A DNA stretch of 64,000 nucleotides from Ascoidea asiatica JCM 7603 (GCA_001600695.1 BCKQ01000001.1:1343950-1407949); one strand, 5' to 3'. Positions 1,689 through 15,009 are shown, counted from the first letter of the stretch. Made by a program: numbers and translations. Notes: generated by a model not told the origin, from the sequence alone.

Positions 1689-4600
1689 TCACCAAAAATC
1701 AATTCCAATAACCATAGCTAATAATGCCATTCTAACATATAAACCATACTTCATTTGTCTAAAATATGCTGCCCTTTGATCAAAATCAACTTCTTCTTTG
1801 ATTTCATTAACTCTTGGTAATGGATGCATTATACACATATGTTGTTTAGCATATGATAATAATTTATTATCAATCACATATGAATCTTTGAATTTGGCAT
1901 AATCTGCTTTATTTTCAAATCTTTCTTCCTGAACTCTAGTAATATATAATACATCAGATTCTGCAATAATTGATGGTGTTAATTCTTCTGTTTCTCCAAT
2001 TAAAAGATGCGATGATTCTAATTTATCTTTAATTTTTTCAGGAAGTGCTAATTCTTTTGGTGAAACTAATTGTACTCTAACTTGATAATGTCTTAAAAGT
2101 TGACATAATGAATGAACTGGTCTTCCATATTTAAGATCTCCAACAAATGTAATTGTTAAACCATTAACAGTACCTAATTCTTCTCTAATGGTAAATAAAT
2201 CTAAAAATGCTTGAGTTGGATGTTCTCTTGAACCATTTCCACAATTAATTATAGGAACAGGTGAATATTTAACTGCAATATCAGCAGATTCTTCATCAGG
2301 ATGACGAAGAGCAATTGCATCAGAATATGCAGCTAAAGTTCTAATTGTATCTTGTAATGTTTCTCCTTTCTTAACAGAAGATGAAGCAGCTTTGACTGAA
2401 ACAACCTCTCCTCCTAATCTTTTCATTGCGGCTTCTGTAGAAGTACATGTTCTAGTTGAAGGTTCATAAAACATTGTTGTTAATAATCTTCCTTTTAATA
2501 AATCTAAACATCCTACTCTTTGAACTGATAGTTTCATTTCTTGAGCAACTGAAAATAAAATATGCAAATCAGCTCTATTAAATTGTTTCACGGAAAGAAT
2601 AGATTTTTTCAAAAATGGATTATTACCACGAATAAATGATTGTATTGCACCTGGAGCTGATAACTCATGAGGTAAAGGTAAATATAATAAATCTTTAACA
2701 TCCTTGGTATCATCTTCAAGAATAGCACTATCATCTTCCAAAGAAAATGGCTTACCAAGACCTTCTCTGGGACTAGAAAATGAAAATCTAGATAGTCTTG
2801 GAGATTTGAGGATATCACTCTTGCTCAAACTGACATGCTCGTCTTTCTTAGGATCCATTCTTAAACAATCTGTATCAGTTACTGAAAGATCAATATTCAT
2901 TGCTAATGCCTCTATCAATAACTTAGCACATTTAACATTGGTAACTAATGGAACAGCAAAATCGATCGCCATTCTTCTAGTTCTATAACCTTGCGAAACA
3001 TAATTAGCAGGTCTTCTGAATCTATTAGAAGAAGGTAAATTGATATACAAATCAATAAGGTTATTACCTAAATGATCTGTTAATGAATATTCCGAAACAT
3101 CATTTTCAATTTCAAGGAAATTAATAGGTATTTCATGTTCATGGTAAAAATTGTATGTACCGGCAGTACCAAATAGTTTGTAACCTAATTTAGCCAAAGT
3201 TTTAATAAAAGGTAATAATTCGGTTTTTTCTTTATAGGAACCAATACTTAAAAGAATATTCTTCTTTGGAAGAGATAAACCAGAGGCAACAAAAGCTTTA
3301 AGATATGCTTCATATTGATTTTTAGCAATTGAAGCAACTTCACCAGTTGAGGCCATTTCAACACCCAAAATTGGATCTGCTCCAGACAATCTGGAAAAGG
3401 AGAATTGAGGAACTTTAATACCAACATAATCATCTGGAAGTTTTTTATTTGGATAAGCTTTTACAGGTAAACCAACAATTGCTTTAGTAGCCATTTCAAT
3501 TAAATCAGTTCCAACAATTTTGGAAACAAAAGGAAAAGATCTTGCAGCTCTAACATTACATTCAATAACCTTAATAACATCGTCTTTTGCAATAAATTGA
3601 ATATTCATTGGACCTGTAATTTGTAATGCCTCAGCAATTTTGGCAGTTGCAACAACAATTTTTGCGACAGTATGTTTGGATAAATCTTGAGGAGGACATA
3701 CTAAAGTAGCATCACCAGAATGAACACCTGCATTTTCAACATGCTCGGAAACAACATGCATAATCAATTTACCATCATTAGCAACTGCATCCATTTCAAT
3801 TTCTTTGGCATTTTCAATAAATTTGGTTATAACAACTGGATAATCACGATTTATAGCAGCTGCTTCCTGTAAGAAAGTAGCTAATTGTTCTGGGGAATAA
3901 GAAACATTCATAGCTGCACCACTAAGAACATAAGAAGGTCTAACTAAGACTGGATAACTAACTTTTGCAGCAAATCCTTTTGCCTCTTCCACAGAAGTAA
4001 GTTCTTTCCACAGAGGTTGATCAACTCCAATTGAATCAAGCATACGACTAAACTTATAACGATTTTCAGCAGAATCAATGTTTTCAGGATTAGTACCCAA
4101 AATTTTAACATTTTGTCTATATAAGGTTAAAGCGATATTGTTTGAGGTTTGACCTCCCATAGAAATAACAACACCAGAAGAGTGTTCTAACTCGTAAATA
4201 TCAAGAACTCTTTCTAAATTGATTGTTTCGAAATATAATCTATCAGCTTCATCATAATCGGTAGAAACAGTTTCTGGATTATAGTTAATCATAACTGTTT
4301 TAAAACCTTGATCTCTTAAAGTTCTTATAGCTCTTACTGCACACCAATCAAATTCAACTGAAGAACCGATTCTGTAAACACCACTTCCTAAAACAATTAC
4401 TCCATTATCATTAAATTTAAGATCACTAGTGTTAGCATTATAAGTGATATAAAGATAATTGGTATGACATGGAAATTCCGCAGCAACAGTGTCAATTTGC
4501 TTAACAAATGGGGTAATTCCTAATTCTTTTCTTAATGTTCTGATAAAAATTTCATTTGAATTTAAAAATTTTGCAATTTGTCTATCTTCGAAACCTAATT

Positions 4601-7367
4601 GTTTAGCTGCTCTGAAAATACCTACTGGTAAATTTTCTTTGATTTTATAAGAGGCGATCTTATTACCAAACTTAATTAAAAAATCAAGTTTATTCAAAAA
4701 CCATTTATCTATTTTTGTTAATTCCCAAATTTTATTAACAGAGTATCCTGTTGATAATGCATTTGCAATTGCAAATAATCTCTGATCAGAAGGTGTTTGC
4801 AATTCAGTGTCTATATCAATTGACATCAAAGCTTGAGTTTGGTTAAAACCAATATTATGTTCATCTGTTGATCTGATAGCTTTCTGTATGGCTTCTTCAA
4901 ATGTACGACCAATAGCCATAACTTCACCAACTGATTTCATCGAACTACTTAAAGAACTTGAGACTCGAGTAAATTTTTTCAAATCCCATCTTGGAATTTT
5001 CACAACAAGATAATCAAGAGAAGGTTCAAAACAGGAATATGTGGATTGAGTAACAGAATTTTTAATTGAGGTTAAAGGAATATTAAGACCAAGTTTAGCA
5101 GCAGTATATGCTAAAGGATAACCAGTGGCTTTTGAAGCTAAAGCAGATGAACGAGATAAACGAGCATTAACTTCAATAATACAATATTCTTTTGAAAATG
5201 GATTTAAAGCATATTGAATATTACATTCACCTACAACCCCCAAATGTCTAATAACATTGACAGCTGTTCTTCTAAGCATCATATAATCATCATTCGATAA
5301 GGTTTGAGAAGGTGCAACGACAATTGAATCACCTGTATGGATACCTAATGGATCAAAATTTTCCATGTTACAAACAGTAATACAGTTATCAAAAGCATCT
5401 CTAACTACTTCATATTCAATTTCTTTCCAACCTTTCATGGATCTTTCAACTAAAACTTGAGGAGAAGTGGCAAATGCCTTTTCACATAAATCAGTTAATT
5501 CTTTTTCATTTTCAGCAAAACCTGAACCTAAACCACCAAGAGCATAAGCAGCTCTGACAATAACAGGAAATCCTATATCTCTTACAGCATCCAAAGCTTC
5601 TTGAATAGATGAAGCTGTAGATGAACGAGCACATTTTTCTCCAATTGAATCCATAGATCTAGCAAATAATTCACGATCTTCAGTGGTAATAATAGTATCA
5701 ATTGGTGTACCAAGAACCTTAACACCTAAGGATTCAAATTCGTCTTTCAATTGAACACCTACATTAAGAGCAGTTTGACCACCAAATGTGCAATAAATCG
5801 AATCTGGTTTTTCTTTAAGGATAACCTTTCTTACAAACTCTGGAGTGACAGGTAAAAAGTAAACTTTATCTGCTAAACCTTGAGAAGTTTGAATAGTTGC
5901 AATATTTGGATTTATAAGGATGGTATAAATACCTTCTTCTTTTAAAGCCTTAATAGCTTGAGAACCAGAATAATCAAATTCACCAGCTTGGCCAATAGAT
6001 AAACCACCAGATCCAAGAACTAAACATTTTTTGGTTTTAACTAAAGGATGTTTCAAAGTATTTTCTACTAAATTTCCACCTGGAAATTCAACAGCTTTCT
6101 TGATTCCATTGATTGAAGATAATATAGAATCAATAAAAACATCAAATAAAAATTCGGCATCAGTTGGACCTGGAGCAGATTCAGGATGAAATTGAACAGA
6201 AAAAAATGGTTTACTTTTATGATAAATACCTTCGTTTGACCCATCATTACTATTAACAAATAATTCTTCCCATCCATTGATTAAAGTTGATTTGTCAACT
6301 GCAAAACCATGATTTTGAGAGGTAATATAACATTTTCCAGAAATTGTTGAAGTACAAGGAATATTTTGACCTCTATTACCAAATTTTAACTTAAGAGTTT
6401 TAGCACCAGCAGCTCTAGCAATTAATTGATGACCAAGACAAATACCAAATATTGGAGTCTTTTCTTCTTTTAAAGCTTGAGACAAATTGGATATAGTTTC
6501 GTTTAAAAATTGAGGATCACCTGGTCCATTGGAAACAAATAAACCATCATAATTTTCACTTAAGAAATCATAATCATAAGGTACAACTTTTAATTCGATA
6601 CCTCTTTTAACAAAACATCTAATTTGATTATATTTCATACCTGTGTCAATAGCTAAAACTCTAATAGGTTTTTGAGTTCTTGGGTTTTTTAAAACAGAAA
6701 CTGAACTTGGAGGATAATAAGTTTTAGGCTCCTTGATTGAAACTTTTGCAACAAGATTTTGAAGATTTGGATCAATCCAATCCGGAATATTATAAGAAGA
6801 TCTCCAACTTTCGTTTAAAGCTATTGGAATTTCAATATTATCAATTGGATAATTGATTCTACCTAGCATTGAACCAGAATCTCTAATATGTTTAGTTAAA
6901 GCTCTAGTATCAATACCATAGATTGCGGGAACATTTTGTTCTTTTAACCATTGACCTAGAGAAGAAGAAGCTAAATAATGAGAATAATCTTCAGTATAAT
7001 GAGCAACAACTAAACCTGCTACATGAATTCTATTTGATTCAAAATACTTGGGTAATGAATTCACTATATCATCTAATTTTTTTCTATCAGGAACACCATA
7101 ATTACCAATTAATGGATAAGTGAATACTAAAATTTGACCTTCATAAGATGGATCTGTTAATGCTTCTGGGTAACCAACCATATTTGTTGAGAAAACCAAC
7201 TCACCAGCAGCTGGCTTTGGTGCACCGAATGAATAACCAGATAAAGTTGTACCATCTTTTAATTCAAGAACCGTCAACTTATCTTGCTCATGTAATTGTG
7301 GACTTATAACATTAGATGGAATATCAGCGTCTGTGGCGAGAGATGAAGAAGAAGCAGATTTGGACAT
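1689..7367 (-). CDS. URA2: Multifunctional glutamine amidotransferase / carbamoyl-phosphate synthetase / aspartate transcarbamylase, lacking the pseudo-DHOase domain; 1892 aa
   Basis: GATase FGICLGHQ and QFHPE; [20 protein letters not shown] and [16 protein letters not shown]; MGS domain; ATCase EPSTRT, HPTQ and HPLP. Confidence 0.97.
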
Positions 7368-8573
7368 TTTATAATTTTTTTTTTTATTATTTTTGTTTAT
7401 TTTTAATATATTTTTGTTAGAATATTGGTATTAATCAAAAAAGATAAAAAAATGAATATGAAATTTTGAAAAAAAGTATTTAAGTAAACAAATTTTCTCT
7501 TTTTGGAATATTAATTATTAACCTGTTTAAAAATTGAGCAGTAATTTTTCAGCAGGTAAGCAGTTTATTATAACAGTATTTCTAAAGTTTTTTTTGATTA
7601 TATCAGTAAGAAACAATAATTCTAACAAAATTAACAAAAAAATAAACAAAAAAAATAAATAAAATAAAGAAAAAAATAAAATAAAGATATTCAAAATCAA
7701 ATAAAGGTAGGAAAATTTTTCTCTTTTTATCAAGATAAATGAGTTGTCGAGCTTTTGAAATTTTTTTGGGTTTTCTAAATTTTTGGTGAGGAGCTATGAT
7801 GTGATCTTGTAGGGTAACGGTCAGCTCATTGCTTGCTTAATAGAACAGAATATTAAATAAACCGAAATACGGCAGATTGAAATTGTCAGCCATTGAAAAA
7901 AAAAATTGCTAAAAAATCGTAAAAAAAAATGTGGATTGAGTAATAAAATGGGCCAAAAAGTCTGGAATTGAAAAAAAATTAAATAAAATTATCTTCTCGT
8001 ACAAGATTTTATGATTTCGACTAAATCTCAGTGAAACAATGCAAGACATGTTACTTAATAGGAATCATATTCTGTAAACAACACAATTTATTGTGGGGCT
8101 TTATTTTTTCCATATTATATCCCCTGGGTATTGAAATATTTTCTTTTGGATTAAATCACTGCGTTGTCTTTAGTTGATATTGCAGATAAAAATATTGGGT
8201 GTGGTGTTTAGCAAGTTTCGCCCCAATAATCTTACAAGCACACGTCTGTAATCAAATGCATTTAGCCGTATATGGCTTTGCGTCAAGTGTTTTATTTTGA
8301 ACCCGCAGATTTGTTTGTACCCCGAATATATCGCTGGGACCTTTTTGGCATCTGACGTTGTCCTAGACCCCTACAGTTCCTAAAACCTTTGTATTATTGT
8401 GTACAGTAACGTTACTGTATTTGCAAGTGAAACTACTCTCAATAACTAAAAACTTAACGTTATGGAAATAAAATCTGATTATTTTAACTATTAGATTTAT
8501 TATAGATTTTTCAAATCATTTTTATATAGAATTCCATTTTTAAGTCTTTCTTTGAACAATCTCATTATTGAAT

Positions 8574-8939
8574 ATGGCTTTCAAATCAAGATATCAAAAA
8601 ACTGCCAATTCTTCATTGAAATTTTGTTTTTCAGAGCTATGTAAATACCTTTTCTTAACTATAGTGGTGGTCATAATTTTAAAAGAATTTACAATACATG
8701 ATGATTTCAACTTAATGCAAATTTCAAGCTTTCAAAGGTTTTTGGCATCTCTTTCAAGAAATTTTTCTCTTGGCTTCAATAACTTTGAAAAAAATGATAT
8801 ACTTGATAATGTCAATGGGAAAATTTTTTTAAAAACTACTCAAAAGCCACCTAGCAATTTTCAAATGGAGTTCAAAACAAGTGCTTTTATACTAGCTAGT
8901 ATAGCTATCGGCTTCTCAGTTTTACTATCTATAACGTGA
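8574..8939 (+). CDS. Candidate orphan small membrane protein, 121 aa
   Basis: ATG in AATATGG context; two hydrophobic segments (YLFLTIVVVIIL; AFILASIAIGFSVLLSIT); ends about 90 bp from the SAS2 stop. No recognisable homology. Confidence 0.35.
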   Translation: MAFKSRYQKTANSSLKFCFSELCKYLFLTIVVVIILKEFTIHDDFNLMQISSFQRFLASLSRNFSLGFNNFEKNDILDNVNGKIFLKTTQKPPSNFQMEFKTSAFILASIAIGFSVLLSIT

Positions 8940-9026
8940 ATTTTACAATATAATTGGTAAACTTCTTTTCTTCATACTTCACAATATTAATTTACAATAG
9001 TATTATACATTACATATCAATTATAA

Positions 9027-10637
9027 TTAGTCTAGAATTAAACAACTTTCGTCTAAAATTTTATCCATATCAATATTATTTTCTTTCACCCATTCGCCAA
9101 TATTTCCTTTCATAATAGTTATAGTACTTGTTAATTTTGTACTTAAGTTTTTCTCATTTTCATTATTACTATTTTCTGATTTTCTTTCAGAAATTTTAGA
9201 ATAATTTTTAACTAGGCAATTCATAAACTCTAATGTTATTAATATATCATCACTCCTAAAGCCTGTAAATCTTGATATCTCATTTATTGATATATCTTCA
9301 ACGTTAGAAAACCTTCCAGTTAAAAATTCCCTGGCTAATACGCTTGACCAATATTTTATGTAACCGATTTTACCGAATGAACTTAATGGATGTTCAGGTC
9401 CGCTAATAATCCCTTGAAATTTGGATAATGCATATGAAAAAGAAATAAGCAAAGTGCCTAATTTTTTTCTTTGATATAGTGGAAAGACACAAATACAAGC
9501 TAAATTATTTTCATCCCACGATATGAGCTCTTTGGAAAAAAATCCCATTGGTCGCCATTTTCCATCTTGCAATTTTGAATAAACAACATAGAACTCAAAT
9601 TGTTCAACATGGAAAAAAATTGATTTAGTATCTAAAAATAATTTTCCAAATAAGCAAAGACATTGGCAAAACAAAGGATATTTGGAACCTCTTACTTTTC
9701 GTATAACACAGTTTCTCTTATCATCTTTATACTTAATTTTCCCAGGTAAATTTTTTTGAAAAGTACATATTTCTCTGTGCTTTGATAGAAATTCTTCGTT
9801 ATTTGTATACTTAAAGCAATAATCGCATACATATAAAGTATCAAGCCAATAACTAATATCATTTGCATTTTGTTTTGTATTTTTATAATCGCCAGCACTT
9901 CCATTAGCACCATTTTCAATTAAATTTTCTTTATGTTTAGTACAACTATTTTCATCCATTGGGTCTTGGATATCAATCAGTTCATCTACAGATTTGTTAA
10001 TCTGAACCATACCGCCAATTTCACCACCTGAAGCATTTTGCAATTTTTTATCTACAATTTTGTTTTCAATAGCCGCGTCATCTTTTTCATTATTTTCTTT
10101 TGCAATGGACTTATTTTCTAAAACAGAATCATTTAATTTTTTATCATCTTTGCTATTTTCATTATTTTCATCAACAACCAATTTATTGCTTTTATCAATT
10201 TTTTCTTGATTACTTCCATCATCAGTAGCCTCAAGTCTTTTATTTGCAATCGCTGGAAGTGCTTTCAGCCCATTTCTTCTTAGATACTTTTTGATTTTCT
10301 TTTTACTTTTACTTCTATTCCGCGTATTCTTTGTGTTTTTAGGAATCTGAAGCTTATTATCTGATTGAGCAGAGTGTAATCTATTTTCACCAATATCACT
10401 ACTATTTTGATTACTCCCAAAAGCATTACAATTTCCATTATTCTGCTTTACTAGCTCGTATCTATAAACATAATCATATCCAAGAGTTTTTTTGTCTTTA
10501 CCAAAGTACATTGAACAACCATACCATGTATCAAACTGATTGTCACCAAAAACCACACTTCTTATATTTCGATGCTGTAAAACCCCATATAAATCTTCTT
10601 CTTCTTCTTCCTCACTCTCCCGCTCCCGTTTAACCAT
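9027..10637 (-). CDS. SAS2: MYST-family histone acetyltransferase, 536 aa (ATG at 10637)
   Basis: C2HC finger CDYCFKY...H...C; CQCLCLFGKLFLDTKS; GFFSKE; NNLACICVFPLYQRKKLG; SGPEHPLS. Divergent from ECM16 as in S. cerevisiae. Confidence 0.9.
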   Translation of the reverse strand: MVKRERESEEEEEEDLYGVLQHRNIRSVVFGDNQFDTWYGCSMYFGKDKKTLGYDYVYRYELVKQNNGNCNAFGSNQNSSDIGENRLHSAQSDNKLQIPKNTKNTRNRSKSKKKIKKYLRRNGLKALPAIANKRLEATDDGSNQEKIDKSNKLVVDENNENSKDDKKLNDSVLENKSIAKENNEKDDAAIENKIVDKKLQNASGGEIGGMVQINKSVDELIDIQDPMDENSCTKHKENLIENGANGSAGDYKNTKQNANDISYWLDTLYVCDYCFKYTNNEEFLSKHREICTFQKNLPGKIKYKDDKRNCVIRKVRGSKYPLFCQCLCLFGKLFLDTKSIFFHVEQFEFYVVYSKLQDGKWRPMGFFSKELISWDENNLACICVFPLYQRKKLGTLLISFSYALSKFQGIISGPEHPLSSFGKIGYIKYWSSVLAREFLTGRFSNVEDISINEISRFTGFRSDDILITLEFMNCLVKNYSKISERKSENSNNENEKNLSTKLTSTITIMKGNIGEWVKENNIDMDKILDESCLILD

Positions 10638-11027
10638 TGTAAAAAAAAATATCAATTAGAAGTAATTATTTTTATATCATTATTATTTTTTGCATTTCGG
10701 TGTCTAGGCTACTACCAAAACTTGAATTAAATGGTGTCTTATTATGAATTTTTGCTTTAAATAAAGCGTTTGATAATGTTTATAGCTTTTTTACCGGTTA
10801 ACAATATTGACATTTGCAAATGTCATCTGAAGTGATTGAATGCATTAAAAAAAACAGACCCGCATCACTGGCTTTCAACGAATTTTTTTATTTTTCAGTT
10901 TAAAATCTATAAAATTTATTTTTAAATTTTGTTGACTTGAAATATTTCAATTTCAATTTTTGTATACTTGATTAATTATAAAATTAAAATATATTTCAAA
11001 GCAATATAATTAAATCATAAATCAATT

Positions 11028-14000
11028 ATGGGTAAAAAGGAAAACAAAAGAAAAGTTTCTGATATCCACATTGAGACTCAGACTACAGAAATTTTAAAGA
11101 AGCAACAAACAGAATCTTTATTACCTAAAAGTAAAAAATTAACCAAGAAATTAAGAAAACAGGTTAGAGAAGATATTAAAAAGCAAAAGATAAGCTCTAA
11201 AAAAAAAAAAAGATTTGCAAAATATGTGGAGCATCAATTACATAGAGAAGAATCTAAAAAAGTTTTAAGTAAATTGGTAGATCAACAAAATGAACTCCAA
11301 AAATTACAGGAACAGCATAAAAAATCAAATCAACTAGAGGAGACGCTACCCGAAAATATTGAAGAACCTAAAGAAAGTAGATCCAGACGTAGGCGATTGA
11401 AGAAGAAATCGTTAAATCTTGAAGAGGAACCAGGCAACGAATTTGAAGATAATTCTTCATTTATTGATTTTAGACCCCCCAAAGGTGGGTTTTCATTTCA
11501 GAATTTAGAAAAAGTGCAAAAAAGTTCAAAACCTAAAATCACATGGAGAGAACGTCTTGAGTCAGGAGGAATAAAATCGAAAAGTAATTCACTTTCCAAA
11601 GATATTTTATCTGGGCAAAATTTGAAGGGTAAAAGGCAAAAGAGTATAGAAGAAGAAGAAGAAGATATTGATGATGATACTTATAATGTTGACGATGACG
11701 ATGACGATAGTGATAGTGATAGTGATGATGAAGAAGATAGTGATTGTGATGAAATGCTGAATATTGACAGGAAAGATAAAAAACAACTAAAAGTAGATTT
11801 AAAGTTGGAATCAGAATCGGAATTGAGTTCAAGTAGTGATAATAGTGATAGTGAAAATGAGATGCAAGAAGATGATGATGAATCCAAAAAAAAAGAAATT
11901 TCAATCAATAAGAAAAAAACGCAGTTCAAAGAGTTTATTGAATCTGTTACAGGACCCAAAACTTCGAATATTGAACAATTACCTGCTGTAACGGCAGAAA
12001 AAGTTGAGAATTTGACTCACAACGATCCCAAGCTTGACTTCTCTGATGATGAAAAGGATATTAAACCCGAATCAGAACCTGAAACTGCTAAATTTCAAAA
12101 GAAAAAATTTATAACAGTGGAAAGAAATCCAGACATACAAGAAATAAGAGAGAGCTTACCAGTATATGAAATTGAAATGGAAATAATGGATAAAATCAAT
12201 AAAAGTGATTGTGTTGTACTTTCTGGCTCAACAGGTTCGGGTAAAACAACACAACTTCCTCAGTTTTTGTATGAAAGTGGTTATGGAATGAAAGCCATGA
12301 TAGGTATCACCCAGCCTAGGAGGGTTGCCACAATATCAATGTCTAATAGAGTTGCAGAGGAATTAGGGAAACAGCATGGAAAACATGTTGGTTACCAGAT
12401 AAGATTTGACTCGAAAGTTTCCAATTTGACAAAAATCAAATTTATGACAGATGGTGTTCTTTTAAGAGAAATGATGAAAGATTTTTTACTTACCAAATAT
12501 TCAGTCATAGTTATTGACGAAGCTCATGAAAGAAATATAAATACTGATATTTTAATTGGAATGCTTAGTAGGGTTATAAAGCTAAGAAGAAAAAAATATT
12601 TGTCTGATCCTGTCAACTTTTTTCCTTTGAAATTAATTATCATGTCAGCTACCCTTAGAGTTTCGGATTTTACTGAAAATAGAAAATTGTTCAAATTGCC
12701 TCCTCCAACTATAAACGTGGATTCCAGAACATTTCCTGTAGCCATTCATTTTAATAAAAGAACGGCATTCAACTATATTGATGAAACATTTAGAAAAGTA
12801 TGTAAAATTCATCGAAAACTTCCAAAGGGAGGAATTTTAGTTTTTATGACCGGACAGCAAGAAATAAGAGAATTGGTTAAAAGATTGAAAAAAGAATTCT
12901 CTGAAAAAAGTGAAAAAAAAAAATTAACAGCAAAACATACAGTAGAAGTTGAACCAGAGGTTCGAGTAAGTGCAAAATATGCTGACACTGAAATCGAAGA
13001 AGTTGATTTTGGGGTTTCAAATAATTATCTTAAAGTTTTAGAAATTGAAACAGGTGATGACTATAATGAATCCGACTCTGAAAGCGAAGAAGAGGGGTTT
13101 GAAGAAACGTTGGATGATGATCAGACCAATAACGATCCCCTTTGTGTCCTACCTTTATATTCACTTCTTCCTGCCTCAGAACAAATGAAAGTATTTCAAG
13201 CTCCTCCGGATGGTACGAGATTATGTATAGTCGCTACAAATATTGCAGAAACTTCGATTACAATTCCTAATATAAAATATGTTGTAGATTGTGGGAGAGA
13301 AAAACAGCTTAATTATAATGAAGAAACTGATGTTATTAGTTATGATGTTGGTTTCATAAGTAAAGCCAGTTGCGAACAAAGATCTGGAAGAGCAGGTCGT
13401 ACAGGTCCTGGTCATTGCTATAGATTATATTCTTCAGCTTTATATGAAAATGAATTTGAGAAATTTTCAAAGCCTGAAATCTTGCGAATTCCAGTTGTGA
13501 GTACAATTCTTCAAATGAAAAGTATGGGAATTGATAATATTTTGAATTTTCCTTTTCCCACACCAATTTCTCATACTTCTCTATTCAAGGCGGAAAACTT
13601 GCTAAAATATCTTGGTGCAATTGATAAAAAAAATGGCATGATAACAAGTCTAGGAAAGCAAATAAGTTTATTTCCACTTAGTCCACGTTTTGCAAAGATG
13701 CTTATCTTGTCTAATCAATTAAACTGCATGCCTTATATTGTTGCAATTGCTAGTGGTTTAACAACAGGAAACCCTTTTTTGAGCGAAGTTGAGTTGGGAA
13801 TTCATCAAGAAAGAGAGGAAAAGACTGATGATACAACAAATAGAGATGACTATGACGAAGACACAAAAAGAAAACCTCAAAGTATAGATAACAATTCATT
13901 TAATCAGGGAAACATAAATAAAATTAGATCTGAATATCATAAATCCATGAGAATATTTTCTAAATGGGACAAAAACTCCGATGTTTTCAAGCTTCTTTCC

Positions 14001-14756
14001 GCAATTTGTGCAAGTGATCATATTCAAAAATCAAAAAAATCTGGCTTTTACAAAAAGCATTTTTTAAGGGAAAAAACTATGGAAGAAATAGCAAAATTAA
14101 GATCGCAATTGCTCTATATTGTCAAATCTTTAACTTTAAAAGAAGATATAGCTGTTCGCGTGGATTTATCACCAGACTCCAAGGAATTAAAATTGCCCCC
14201 TCCTTCTGAAAAACAAATAATGGCTATGAAGCAAATGATAACCTCTGGTTTTGTTGACCAAATAAGTGTTAGAGCTGACTTGGTTTCTACTGAAGTTAAA
14301 TTCAGTAATAAAACAAATATCATGAATATTCCCTATAAGACTTTGTTTTCTACCAAATTTGACGAAGATGATAATCCATATGTTTATATCCATCCCTCAA
14401 GTATTATAATGAATTGTGGGCGGATGCCTCCCTCATATATTGTTTATCAGTCAATTAATTTGTCTTCATCATCTTCGGAGAATGAAATGTCACAAAGAAA
14501 AAAAAGATTACGAGCTTTGTGTGATATATCTCCTAAGGCTCTAACCAATATTGCAAAAAGTAGTAGTTTAATTACTTACTCAAAACCTTTAGGTCCACCT
14601 TATGAGCCAAAATTATTAGATGGTAACGTAAATAAGCGAACTTGTTATGTTATACCAAGATTTGGTGCCGATATTGGAAGTGGTGGAGTTGGCTGGGATC
14701 TCCCCGTTATAAAAGTAATTCAAGAACGAATCAATGGTCAATGGGCAATAGTCTAG
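11028..14756 (+). CDS. ECM16: DEAH-box RNA helicase Dhr1 (U3 snoRNP), 1242 aa
   Basis: GSTGSGKTTQ, TQPRRVA, DEAH, MSAT and QRSGRAGRTGPGHCYRLY motifs; Dhr1-type C-terminus YSKPLGPP and GWDLP. Confidence 0.93.
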   Translation: MGKKENKRKVSDIHIETQTTEILKKQQTESLLPKSKKLTKKLRKQVREDIKKQKISSKKKKRFAKYVEHQLHREESKKVLSKLVDQQNELQKLQEQHKKSNQLEETLPENIEEPKESRSRRRRLKKKSLNLEEEPGNEFEDNSSFIDFRPPKGGFSFQNLEKVQKSSKPKITWRERLESGGIKSKSNSLSKDILSGQNLKGKRQKSIEEEEEDIDDDTYNVDDDDDDSDSDSDDEEDSDCDEMLNIDRKDKKQLKVDLKLESESELSSSSDNSDSENEMQEDDDESKKKEISINKKKTQFKEFIESVTGPKTSNIEQLPAVTAEKVENLTHNDPKLDFSDDEKDIKPESEPETAKFQKKKFITVERNPDIQEIRESLPVYEIEMEIMDKINKSDCVVLSGSTGSGKTTQLPQFLYESGYGMKAMIGITQPRRVATISMSNRVAEELGKQHGKHVGYQIRFDSKVSNLTKIKFMTDGVLLREMMKDFLLTKYSVIVIDEAHERNINTDILIGMLSRVIKLRRKKYLSDPVNFFPLKLIIMSATLRVSDFTENRKLFKLPPPTINVDSRTFPVAIHFNKRTAFNYIDETFRKVCKIHRKLPKGGILVFMTGQQEIRELVKRLKKEFSEKSEKKKLTAKHTVEVEPEVRVSAKYADTEIEEVDFGVSNNYLKVLEIETGDDYNESDSESEEEGFEETLDDDQTNNDPLCVLPLYSLLPASEQMKVFQAPPDGTRLCIVATNIAETSITIPNIKYVVDCGREKQLNYNEETDVISYDVGFISKASCEQRSGRAGRTGPGHCYRLYSSALYENEFEKFSKPEILRIPVVSTILQMKSMGIDNILNFPFPTPISHTSLFKAENLLKYLGAIDKKNGMITSLGKQISLFPLSPRFAKMLILSNQLNCMPYIVAIASGLTTGNPFLSEVELGIHQEREEKTDDTTNRDDYDEDTKRKPQSIDNNSFNQGNINKIRSEYHKSMRIFSKWDKNSDVFKLLSAICASDHIQKSKKSGFYKKHFLREKTMEEIAKLRSQLLYIVKSLTLKEDIAVRVDLSPDSKELKLPPPSEKQIMAMKQMITSGFVDQISVRADLVSTEVKFSNKTNIMNIPYKTLFSTKFDEDDNPYVYIHPSSIIMNCGRMPPSYIVYQSINLSSSSSENEMSQRKKRLRALCDISPKALTNIAKSSSLITYSKPLGPPYEPKLLDGNVNKRTCYVIPRFGADIGSGGVGWDLPVIKVIQERINGQWAIV

Positions 14757-15009
14757 ACCTCAAAAGCGAATTTTTCCTCTCTGCATTCACATTTTTTTCT
14801 ATTGCATGAAAACAAAATTTATTCTCAAATCAATATGAGCTCATTGTATTTTTAAATTCGAAATTTTTTGCAAATTTATAACCTAATAAATAATTTTCAG
14901 CTCAGAAAGCTAAATATGCTTTTGTAAAAACTGCTCAAACGTTAAAGCGAAGTTCTAAAATTTACTAGCCTAATGAAAATAGCATGCAAAACCTTAAAAA
15001 ACCTTAAAT

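What the first reader, a model, noticed from the sequence alone, without database searches (positions are those of the whole stretch)
2640..2900. Ura2 has lost its entire pseudo-dihydroorotase domain: a compact CPS-ATC fusion
Seen: the ORF is 1892 aa. After the MGS domain end ([24 protein letters not shown]) only about 55 residues of linker precede [11 protein letters not shown] and the ATCase. There is no intron signal or frameshift at the junction. Known: fungal Ura2/CAD-like proteins (about 2200 aa) keep a catalytically dead DHO-like domain of roughly 300 aa here. That domain dimerises and links ATC trimers into a hexamer, and has been implicated in relaying UTP feedback to ATCase. The linker still has RLSRFS, resembling the RRFS kinase-type site. 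Inference: this is a natural DHO-less architecture, predicted to be trimeric with altered UTP feedback or channelling.
Basis: partly seen in the sequence, partly recalled or inferred. Interest (0 to 1): 0.85.

Follow-up and report, generated by a model that had tools for sequence, protein, structure and literature searches.

The report
Yeast Ura2 without its dead-dihydroorotase domain
The first enzyme of pyrimidine synthesis in this Ascoidea-type yeast really does lack the inactive dihydroorotase-like domain that the field treats as the scaffold of the enzyme complex; the loss is old, shared by Ascoidea and Saccharomycopsis, and has happened again independently elsewhere.

Summary
Observation confirmed. 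Window 1689-7367 (-) is one uninterrupted 1892-aa URA2 ORF with the order GATase, CPSase, MGS-like allosteric domain, 80-aa linker, ATCase. No dihydroorotase-like (pDHO) domain is present.

It is not an assembly artefact. Ascoidea rubescens, Saccharomycopsis crataegensis and five further Saccharomycopsis-like assemblies carry the same deletion with the same breakpoints, and they form one clade (SH-aLRT 99-100). About 340 residues are missing. The downstream linker with the conserved R-x-[RK]-F-S-F kinase-type site is kept.

The gene is under strong purifying selection (dN/dS 0.08 against A. rubescens) and is the only ATCase in the 20.3-Mb genome. URA4, DHODH, URA3 and a separate CPA2-like CPSase are present. 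No stand-alone pDHO was found.

New here:
- There is no compensating insertion.
- All 11 clade-fixed changes at positions otherwise near-invariant in yeasts lie in CPS.B and the allosteric domain (11/367 vs 0/749, p=4e-6). Three control clades show no such bias.
- DHO-less GATase-CPSase-ATCase fusions also occur in an uncultured Pezizomycotina-like fungus and on giant-virus MAG contigs.

No paper describing any of these was found. Whether the enzyme is a trimer, and whether UTP feedback is altered, was not tested. A read-level check could not be run.

The parts
1689..7367 (-). URA2 orthologue: single 1892-aa ORF, GATase-CPSase-linker-ATCase, no pDHO domain
   Evidence: 86% aa identity and collinear with A. 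rubescens Ura2, with conserved neighbours.
6078..7367 (-). Glutaminase part (CPSase small-chain domain plus class-I GATase), residues 1-430
   Evidence: Pfam PF00988 34-171 and PF00117 239-413; TIGR01368 33-415.
2904..6038 (-). CPSase large part, residues 444-1488: two ATP-grasp halves, oligomerisation domain, MGS-like allosteric domain
   Evidence: TIGR01369 1471 bits, 444-1488; Pfam.
2862..3905 (-). Stretch (residues 1155-1502, CPS.B plus allosteric domain) that holds all 11 substitutions fixed in the DHO-less clade at positions near-invariant in 25 DHO-containing yeasts
   Evidence: 11/367 vs 0/749, Fisher p=4e-6; control clades show no clustering.
2940..3221 (-). MGS-like allosteric domain core, residues 1383-1476
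   Evidence: Pfam PF02142; AF2 pLDDT mostly 70-93.
2862..2867 (-). Deletion point: last MGS residue C1501 followed by L1502. Other yeasts continue here with Q-T-S-H and about 340 residues of pDHO.
   Evidence: Alignment A1; residue counts; coordinates.
2625..2864 (-). 80-aa linker, residues 1502-1581. Residues 1503-1552 and 1560-1564 are predicted disordered.
   Evidence: AF2 with a 63-sequence alignment: pLDDT below 50 and no secondary structure there. dN/dS 0.20 against 0.05-0.09 in the domains.
2781..2798 (-). RLSRFS (1524-1529), aligned with the conserved R-x-[RK]-F-S-F kinase-type site of the pDHO-ATC linker of other yeasts
   Evidence: Alignment A1: S140 invariant and F141 at least 90% conserved across 12 sequences.
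1707..2606 (-). ATCase domain, residues 1588-1887, with catalytic motifs S-T-R-T, H-P-T-Q and H-P-L-P-R present
   Evidence: TIGR00670 333 bits; invariant columns; closest solved structure 5NNN, Chaetomium CAD-like ATC, E 1.8e-132; AF2 pLDDT above 90.

Best explanation
The gene is the URA2 orthologue of an Ascoidea species. An in-frame deletion of about 340 codons removed the whole inactive dihydroorotase-like domain. This happened in the common ancestor of Ascoidea and Saccharomycopsis. The deletion joined the end of the CPSase allosteric (MGS-like) domain to the pre-existing flexible pDHO-ATC linker, which still carries its R-x-R-F-S-F phosphorylation-type site. The product is a working glutaminase-CPSase tethered to ATCase by about 60 disordered residues. 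It makes carbamoyl phosphate and carbamoyl aspartate, and a separate URA4-type enzyme performs the dihydroorotase step.

Shown: the architecture, its clade-wide conservation, purifying selection, single copy, an otherwise complete pathway, a disordered linker, and a cluster of clade-fixed substitutions in CPS.B and the allosteric domain.

Inferred: ATC domains still form catalytic trimers, because the motifs are intact and trimerisation is a family property. The two-fold contact that DHO or pDHO dimers provide in the published 'dimer of trimers' model is gone. The particle is therefore either a trimer or is held by new or strengthened CPSase contacts. The substitution cluster may be adaptation of the CPSase surface that used to face pDHO.
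For: Architecture: continuous ORF and domain map.

Same breakpoints in window, A. rubescens, S. crataegensis and four further Saccharomycopsis-like assemblies (P0027, P0037, P0082, P0120): 18-27 aa against 359-375 aa between the MGS end and the RFS site.

One clade on protein trees: the tree rows were window, P0001, P0021, P0027, P0037, P0082 and P0124; SH-aLRT 99-100. P0124 is a 1871-aa member of the P0120 cluster.

Synteny with A. rubescens.

Selection: dN/dS 0.078 overall, 0.053 for CPS, 0.085 for ATC and 0.196 for the linker.

Genome content: one ATC domain only. URA4-type DHOase scores 441 bits. DHODH and OMP decarboxylase are present. There is a second CPA2-like CPSase.

No pDHO elsewhere: TIGR00857 detects yeast pDHO domains at E 1e-10 to 1e-11. 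In this genome it hits only an allantoinase and URA4.

No other clade-specific indel. All 11 fixed substitutions fall in residues 1155-1502, p=4e-6, and three control clades show no bias.

AF2: linker pLDDT below 50, flanking domains confident.

Published model of DHO and pDHO as the dimerising scaffold: PMC8442968 and bioRxiv 10.1101/2024.07.30.605799.
Against: Expression and the exact mRNA are therefore inferred from conservation.

Oligomeric state, channelling and UTP regulation are untested.

The substitution cluster sits on a single branch of the tree. It could reflect a change in allosteric regulation unrelated to pDHO loss.

dS is saturated (about 1.3), so dN/dS values are approximate.

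The Saccharomycopsis-like Logan sequences are assigned to that genus only by tree position.
Confidence: 0.85

Rival explanations
1. The enzyme still forms a hexamer or other higher oligomer. The two-fold contact formerly made by pDHO dimers is provided by CPSase-CPSase contacts (oligomerisation or allosteric domains), so loss of pDHO changed little in quaternary structure or regulation.
For: [quoted passage not shown] The CPSase oligomerisation domain is intact (PF02787 855-934). The 11 clade-fixed substitutions lie in CPS.B and the allosteric domain, which could be a remodelled interface.
Against: In the current AlphaFold-based CAD hexamer model the CPS-2 domains contact only ATC and DHO of their own subunit (bioRxiv 10.1101/2024.07.30.605799). 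There is no direct evidence here either way.
Confidence: 0.35
2. Assembly or gene-model artefact: about 1 kb encoding pDHO is missing from the assembly or hidden in an unrecognised intron.
For: No reads could be laid on the junction.
Against: The ORF is continuous across the junction. The same architecture and breakpoints occur in at least seven other independent assemblies from two genera: NCBI GCA_001661345.1, GCA_037102585.1 and several Logan run assemblies. A continuous ORF leaves no room for a coding exon.
Confidence: 0.02
3. The pDHO module was not lost but moved. It is encoded as a separate gene and joins the complex in trans, as inactive DHO does with ATC in Pseudomonas.
For: Non-covalent DHO-ATC complexes exist in bacteria (PMC8442968).
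Against: A yeast pDHO protein and an 11-sequence pDHO profile found nothing in the genome, though without a positive control. TIGR00857, which does recognise yeast pDHO, hits only an allantoinase (TIGR03178 451 bits, above cut-off) and URA4.
Confidence: 0.03
4. URA2 is decaying in this lineage. The deletion is the first step of loss of de novo pyrimidine synthesis, with growth relying on salvage.
For: None beyond the deletion itself.
Against: dN/dS is 0.08 over 1892 codons. All catalytic motifs are invariant. URA4, DHODH and URA3 are intact ORFs. The architecture is kept across two genera.
Confidence: 0.02

Closest known systems
Fungal CAD-like protein Ura2 (S. cerevisiae URA2; Chaetomium thermophilum CAD-like, PDB 5NNN ATC domain)
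   Same: Orthologous by tree and synteny. Same GATase, CPSase, allosteric domain, linker with the R-F-S site and ATCase. Same division of labour with a separate URA4 dihydroorotase.
   Different: [quoted passage not shown] Total length is 1892 aa against about 2200 aa.
Animal and dictyostelid CAD (GLN-CPS2-DHO-ATC)
   Same: Same order of CPS and ATC, a long flexible linker before ATC that carries a regulatory phosphosite, and the ATC trimer as catalytic unit.
   Different: CAD has an active DHO whose dimerisation is reported to be required for function (M1601E; bioRxiv 10.1101/2024.07.30.605799). Here there is no DHO-fold domain at all.
Giant-virus MAG GATase-CPSase-ATCase fusions (IMG/VR GVMAG contigs; proteins P0233, P0347 and others)
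   Same: Same DHO-less domain order: MGS-like domain followed by a linker of about 50-70 aa (a rough count from alignment A3), then ATC, in ORFs of 1741-1873 aa.
   Different: Independent origin. They branch with metagenomic and animal CAD, not with fungi. Their linkers are low-complexity, acidic or N-rich, and lack the R-F-S site.
Free ATCase trimers (plants, Bacillus subtilis)
   Same: If the DHO-less Ura2 is a plain trimer, its ATC core would resemble these unbridged catalytic trimers (PMC4581275).
   Different: Here each ATC chain is covalently tethered to a 1500-aa glutaminase-CPSase.

Membership tests
Fungal CAD-like Ura2 (GATase-CPSase-pDHO-ATCase) | N-terminal glutaminase (CPSase small-chain plus class-I GATase) | tested here: met
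   PF00988, PF00117; TIGR01368 456 bits.
Fungal CAD-like Ura2 (GATase-CPSase-pDHO-ATCase) | Full CPSase large part with two ATP-grasp halves and the MGS-like allosteric domain | tested here: met
   TIGR01369 1471 bits, above cut-off 1027; PF02786 x2, PF02787, PF02142.
Fungal CAD-like Ura2 (GATase-CPSase-pDHO-ATCase) | Inactive dihydroorotase-like domain between CPSase and ATCase | tested here: not met
   24 residues where other yeasts have 359-375. No DHO family appears in the Pfam hits or among the 25 NCBIfam families shown of 91 matched, while yeast pDHO domains do hit NF003271 and TIGR00857.
Fungal CAD-like Ura2 (GATase-CPSase-pDHO-ATCase) | Linker before ATC with the conserved R-x-[RK]-F-S-F site | tested here: met
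   RLSRFSFS aligns with the site in 11 other yeast proteins.
Fungal CAD-like Ura2 (GATase-CPSase-pDHO-ATCase) | C-terminal ATCase with catalytic motifs | tested here: met
   TIGR00670 333 bits, above cut-off 237; invariant S-T-R-T, H-P-T-Q and P-L-P-R columns.
Fungal CAD-like Ura2 (GATase-CPSase-pDHO-ATCase) | Orthology: vertical descent within Saccharomycotina and single copy | tested here: met
   Nested in the yeast clade; only ATC in the genome; synteny with A. rubescens.
Fungal CAD-like Ura2 (GATase-CPSase-pDHO-ATCase) | Hexamer (dimer of trimers), UTP inhibition of CPSase and ATCase, carbamoyl-phosphate channelling | not testable with these tools
   Needs purified protein.
Animal-type CAD | Active DHO domain (Amidohydro_1 with metal ligands) | tested here: not met
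   No PF01979 or DHO model hit (none among the 25 families shown). DHO activity is encoded by a separate URA4-type gene.

The most novel reading that the evidence does not exclude
Ascoideales Ura2 works as a free trimer, or as a particle held by a newly evolved CPSase interface marked by the 11 clustered substitutions. It would still channel carbamoyl phosphate and respond to UTP. That would show the DHO or pDHO scaffold, currently held to be essential for CAD-type enzymes, is dispensable. The repeated natural losses in yeasts, a filamentous ascomycete and giant viruses would then define a minimal CPS-ATC 'pyrimidine starter' module.
Probability: 0.3. Interest if true: 0.75.

Novelty: new variant of a known kind. 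Interest (0 to 1): 0.6.

Why it matters
Current structural work on CAD and CAD-like enzymes argues that the DHO fold is kept in fungi, despite being catalytically dead, because its dimer is the central scaffold of the hexamer. It also argues that DHO dimerisation is required for function (PMC8442968; bioRxiv 10.1101/2024.07.30.605799).

A whole yeast order has lived without that domain, under strong purifying selection. The architecture has also arisen independently in another fungus and in giant viruses. Together these form a natural experiment against the strong form of that view.

It gives a smaller, possibly more tractable protein for structural work. It also gives a defined set of 11 candidate compensatory substitutions. 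With these one can ask what the scaffold is for: assembly, channelling of carbamoyl phosphate, or transmission of UTP inhibition to ATCase.

It also matters for annotation. These proteins carry the same name as 2200-aa Ura2, although one domain is absent.

Tried and rejected
- Searches of the genome with one yeast pDHO protein and with an 11-sequence pDHO profile were blank. They had no positive control, so I do not rely on them. I replaced them with TIGR00857, which was shown to recognise yeast pDHO.
- The TIGR00857 hit at G000:C1:2074387-2076084 was considered as a possible stand-alone pDHO. I rejected it: it is an allantoinase (TIGR03178 451 bits).
- The first AF2 run, with a 12-sequence alignment, gave pLDDT 49 and was discarded. 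A 63-sequence alignment gave a usable model.
- The 24 residues between the MGS end and the RFS site were placed by MAFFT against an internal pDHO segment (L-x-x-F-P-E against W-P-E-x-K). They are too short to test, so I make no claim of a pDHO remnant.
- A mis-framed reference was corrected.
- Serre et al. 2004 (BMC Biochem 5:6) is not held, so the role of pDHO in UTP signalling could not be checked in a source.
- Literature searches for Ascoidea or Saccharomycopsis with URA2, for DHO-less CPS-ATC wording and for giant-virus CPS/ATC found no description. The library is partial, so this is absence of evidence only.

Full report
**The observation**

Window 1689-7367 on the minus strand is one ORF of 1892 codons. 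Pfam and NCBIfam place these domains on it:
- a CPSase small-chain domain and a class-I glutaminase (residues 34-413);
- a complete CPSase large part (444-1488, TIGR01369 1471 bits), which includes the MGS-like allosteric domain (1383-1476);
- an aspartate carbamoyltransferase (1588-1887, TIGR00670 333 bits).

No amidohydrolase or dihydroorotase model matches.

The MGS domain ends at T-D-T-D-C (1497-1501, window 2865-2879). The N-terminal ATC motif N-N-P-F starts at 1582. That leaves 80 residues between them (window 2625-2864). The finding's coordinates, 2640-2900, are therefore the right place. The only correction is that 64 residues, not about 55, precede P-H-E-L-S-A-P.

**Is it real?**

The case against an artefact rests on independent assemblies. 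A search of 5.8 billion proteins with residues 1350-1892 returned six proteins covered end to end:
- Ascoidea rubescens DSM 1968 (1885 aa, 85% identity over this region);
- Saccharomycopsis crataegensis (1884 aa);
- four Logan run-assembly proteins of 1853-1887 aa.

A fifth Logan protein, P0124 (1871 aa), came from the cluster of P0120 and stood in for it in the trees. Every other yeast hit was about 2200 aa and covered only 57-79% of the query, because it has an insert.

In the alignment the short proteins stop and resume at the same columns. They stop directly after the last MGS residue. They resume a few residues before the conserved S-P-x-x-R-[RK]-F-S-F segment. Between those anchors they have 18-27 residues, and five DHO-containing yeasts have 359-375. 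The downstream linker is the same length in both groups, 51-57 against 43-54 residues.

The A. rubescens and S. crataegensis genes are single ORFs on megabase scaffolds. The A. rubescens locus has the same kinds of upstream neighbours reported for this window: an ammonium transporter, a MOZ/SAS acetyltransferase and a DEAH helicase.

**One event, old**

On a maximum-likelihood tree of 36 yeast Ura2 proteins, the seven DHO-less sequences form one clade. SH-aLRT is 100. The clade splits into an Ascoidea pair and a Saccharomycopsis group and needs only one change of state. The result holds on a broader tree. The loss therefore dates to the common ancestor of the two genera, the order Ascoideales in current taxonomy (my knowledge, not tested here).

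**Is the gene functional?**

- Against A. rubescens, dN/dS is 0.078 overall. By region it is 0.053 for CPS, 0.085 for ATC, 0.096 for GATase and 0.196 for the linker. dS is near saturation, so the ratios are rough, but constraint is evident.
- The catalytic ATC motifs are invariant across 63 sequences that include animals and viruses.
- The 20.3-Mb genome has no second ATC domain, only an OTCase.
- It has a second CPA2-like CPSase (58% identity).
- It has a URA4-type dihydroorotase (TIGR00856 441 bits, above cut-off).
- It has a DHODH and an OMP decarboxylase.

So the de novo pathway is complete and this ORF is its only entry enzyme.

**Is pDHO encoded elsewhere?**

Searches with one yeast pDHO protein and with a pDHO profile were blank but uncontrolled. 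TIGR00857 recognises yeast pDHO domains at E 1.9e-10 and 2.8e-11. In this genome it hits only URA4 and a 644-aa ORF at C1:2074387-2076084. That ORF is an allantoinase (TIGR03178 451 bits, cut-off 358). I found no stand-alone pDHO.

**What changed with the loss?**

In a 32-sequence alignment, the only indel that separates the DHO-less clade from 25 DHO-containing yeasts is the pDHO deletion. There is no compensating insertion.

Eleven positions are near-invariant in the 25 other yeasts and fixed to a different residue in all seven DHO-less proteins. All eleven lie in residues 1155-1502, which is the second CPSase half plus the allosteric domain. The count is 11 of 367 testable columns there against 0 of 749 elsewhere (Fisher p=4e-6). 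The same test gives no bias in three control clades:
- Saccharomycetaceae: 13 fixed changes, 4/388 against 9/828;
- Pichiales: 0 fixed changes;
- Serinales: 2 fixed changes.

The clustering is shown. That it reflects re-adaptation of the CPSase surface that used to face pDHO is inference. All the changes sit on one branch, and a change in allosteric regulation would look the same.

**The linker**

With a 63-sequence alignment, AlphaFold2 gives a confident model (mean pLDDT 84.8). The MGS and ATC domains are well defined. Residues 1503-1552 and 1560-1564 fall below pLDDT 50 and have no secondary structure. An earlier run with 12 sequences was unusable.

The R-L-S-R-F-S segment (1524-1529) sits in this disordered stretch. 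It aligns with the conserved site of other yeasts. From memory, this corresponds to the PKA-type site of S. cerevisiae Ura2; I did not verify that in a source.

**Mechanism**

Published work holds that ATC trimers and DHO (or fungal pDHO) dimers together build the hexamer. Mutating the DHO-like interface of a Chaetomium pDHO-ATC construct leaves trimers (PMC8442968). DHO dimerisation is reported to be required for human CAD function (bioRxiv 10.1101/2024.07.30.605799).

By that model the Ascoideales enzyme has lost its two-fold contact. It is either a trimer of 210-kDa chains around an ATC core, or it uses CPSase contacts. CPSase contacts were once proposed for Neurospora. I put about 0.35 on a retained higher oligomer. 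Nothing here tests UTP feedback or channelling.

**How unusual is the architecture?**

A profile-free scan of 1.84 billion representatives, followed by Pfam, turned up further complete GATase-CPSase-ATCase proteins without DHO.

1. *Giant-virus MAG family.* These are proteins of 1784-1842 aa, with ORFs of up to 1873 aa on the IMG/VR loci. They are single ORFs on AT-rich, gene-dense contigs. IMG/VR lists several of these contigs as giant-virus MAGs: GVMAG-M-3300021961-10, GVMAG-M-3300020595-7, GVMAG-S-3300005613-53 and GVMAG-M-3300001348-7. Their neighbours include succinate dehydrogenase subunits, NAD-dependent DNA ligase, DNA methyltransferases, HNH endonucleases, deoxynucleoside kinase and many orphan genes. 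On the tree they fall in a clade of metagenomic CAD-like proteins next to animal CAD, far from fungi.

2. *A fungal metagenome gene.* It is called in four ORF pieces and spans about 1900 aa in total, on contigs of 45% GC with a fungal transcription-factor neighbour. Its last ORF runs without interruption from CPS.B through MGS and an 85-aa linker into ATC. It groups with Pseudogymnoascus (Leotiomycetes), not with Ascoideales.

The DHO-less state has therefore arisen at least three times. My survey cannot be exhaustive, because the protein tools list only the best hits and the representatives are clustered at 50% identity.

**Literature**

Searches for Ascoidea or Saccharomycopsis with URA2, for DHO-less wording and for giant-virus CPS/ATC found no description. 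Reviews name two eukaryotic ATC types (a free trimer in plants, and CAD in animals and Dictyostelium) and note that fungal CAD-like proteins carry an inactive DHO domain. One says that fungal ATC 'usually' fuses to CPS2 via a pseudo-DHOase (PMC4581275). The library is partial, and the sequences themselves are public under the ordinary Ura2 name.

**Verdict**

The finding is real and the gene is functional. The loss is clade-wide and appears undescribed in the literature I could search. It is a new variant of a known enzyme, not a new kind of system. Its value is as a natural test of what the DHO scaffold does.

Noticed in passing
L007:190-5661, L011, L012:6158-11779, L013, L017:6260-11761, L006:10001-15415, L004:3139-8667: Giant-virus MAG contigs (IMG/VR GVMAG names; 22-31% GC) encode single-ORF GATase-CPSase-ATCase fusions of 1741-1873 aa without a DHO domain. 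Neighbours include SDHA/SDHB, NAD-dependent ligase, methyltransferases, HNH endonucleases and dNK. I found no paper describing them.
   Followed up: partly
L090:4182-10049 (also L091): A fungal metagenome contig (45% GC, gene split into four called ORFs) carries a DHO-less URA2. Its C-terminal part is sister to Pseudogymnoascus, so this is an independent loss in a Pezizomycotina-like fungus, seen in at least three samples.
   Followed up: partly
window 2436-2459 (-), residues 1637-1644: The carbamoyl-phosphate loop reads S-T-R-T-C-T-S-T in the window and in A. rubescens. Saccharomycopsis and all other yeasts aligned have S-T-R-T-x-x-S-F. This Phe-to-Thr change is specific to Ascoidea.
   Followed up: partly
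window 4011-4013 (-), codon 1119: URA2 has a single CTG among 183 Leu codons (TTA 115, CTT 38, TTG 22). This fits the CUG ambiguity reported for Ascoidea (my knowledge).
   Followed up: partly
G000:C1:2074322-2076256 (L089:1322-3256, -): The allantoinase orthologue is 644 aa. The NCBIfam matches fall in two stretches, the best at about residues 370-640. The ORF is roughly 190 residues longer than the 441-position allantoinase model, and I did not work out where the extra residues lie.
   Followed up: no
L087:1-9000 versus window 7400-15000: Upstream of URA2, A. rubescens has an ammonium transporter, a MOZ/SAS acetyltransferase and a DEAH helicase. The window has ORFs of matching size and order, so the locus looks syntenic. 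I did not annotate the window ORFs themselves.
   Followed up: partly
L035, L061, L080, L084 and many other viral-contig loci: Many large viral contigs (about 330-370 kb, chlorovirus-sized) carry a stand-alone ATCase gene, matched only over the ATC part of the query.
   Followed up: no
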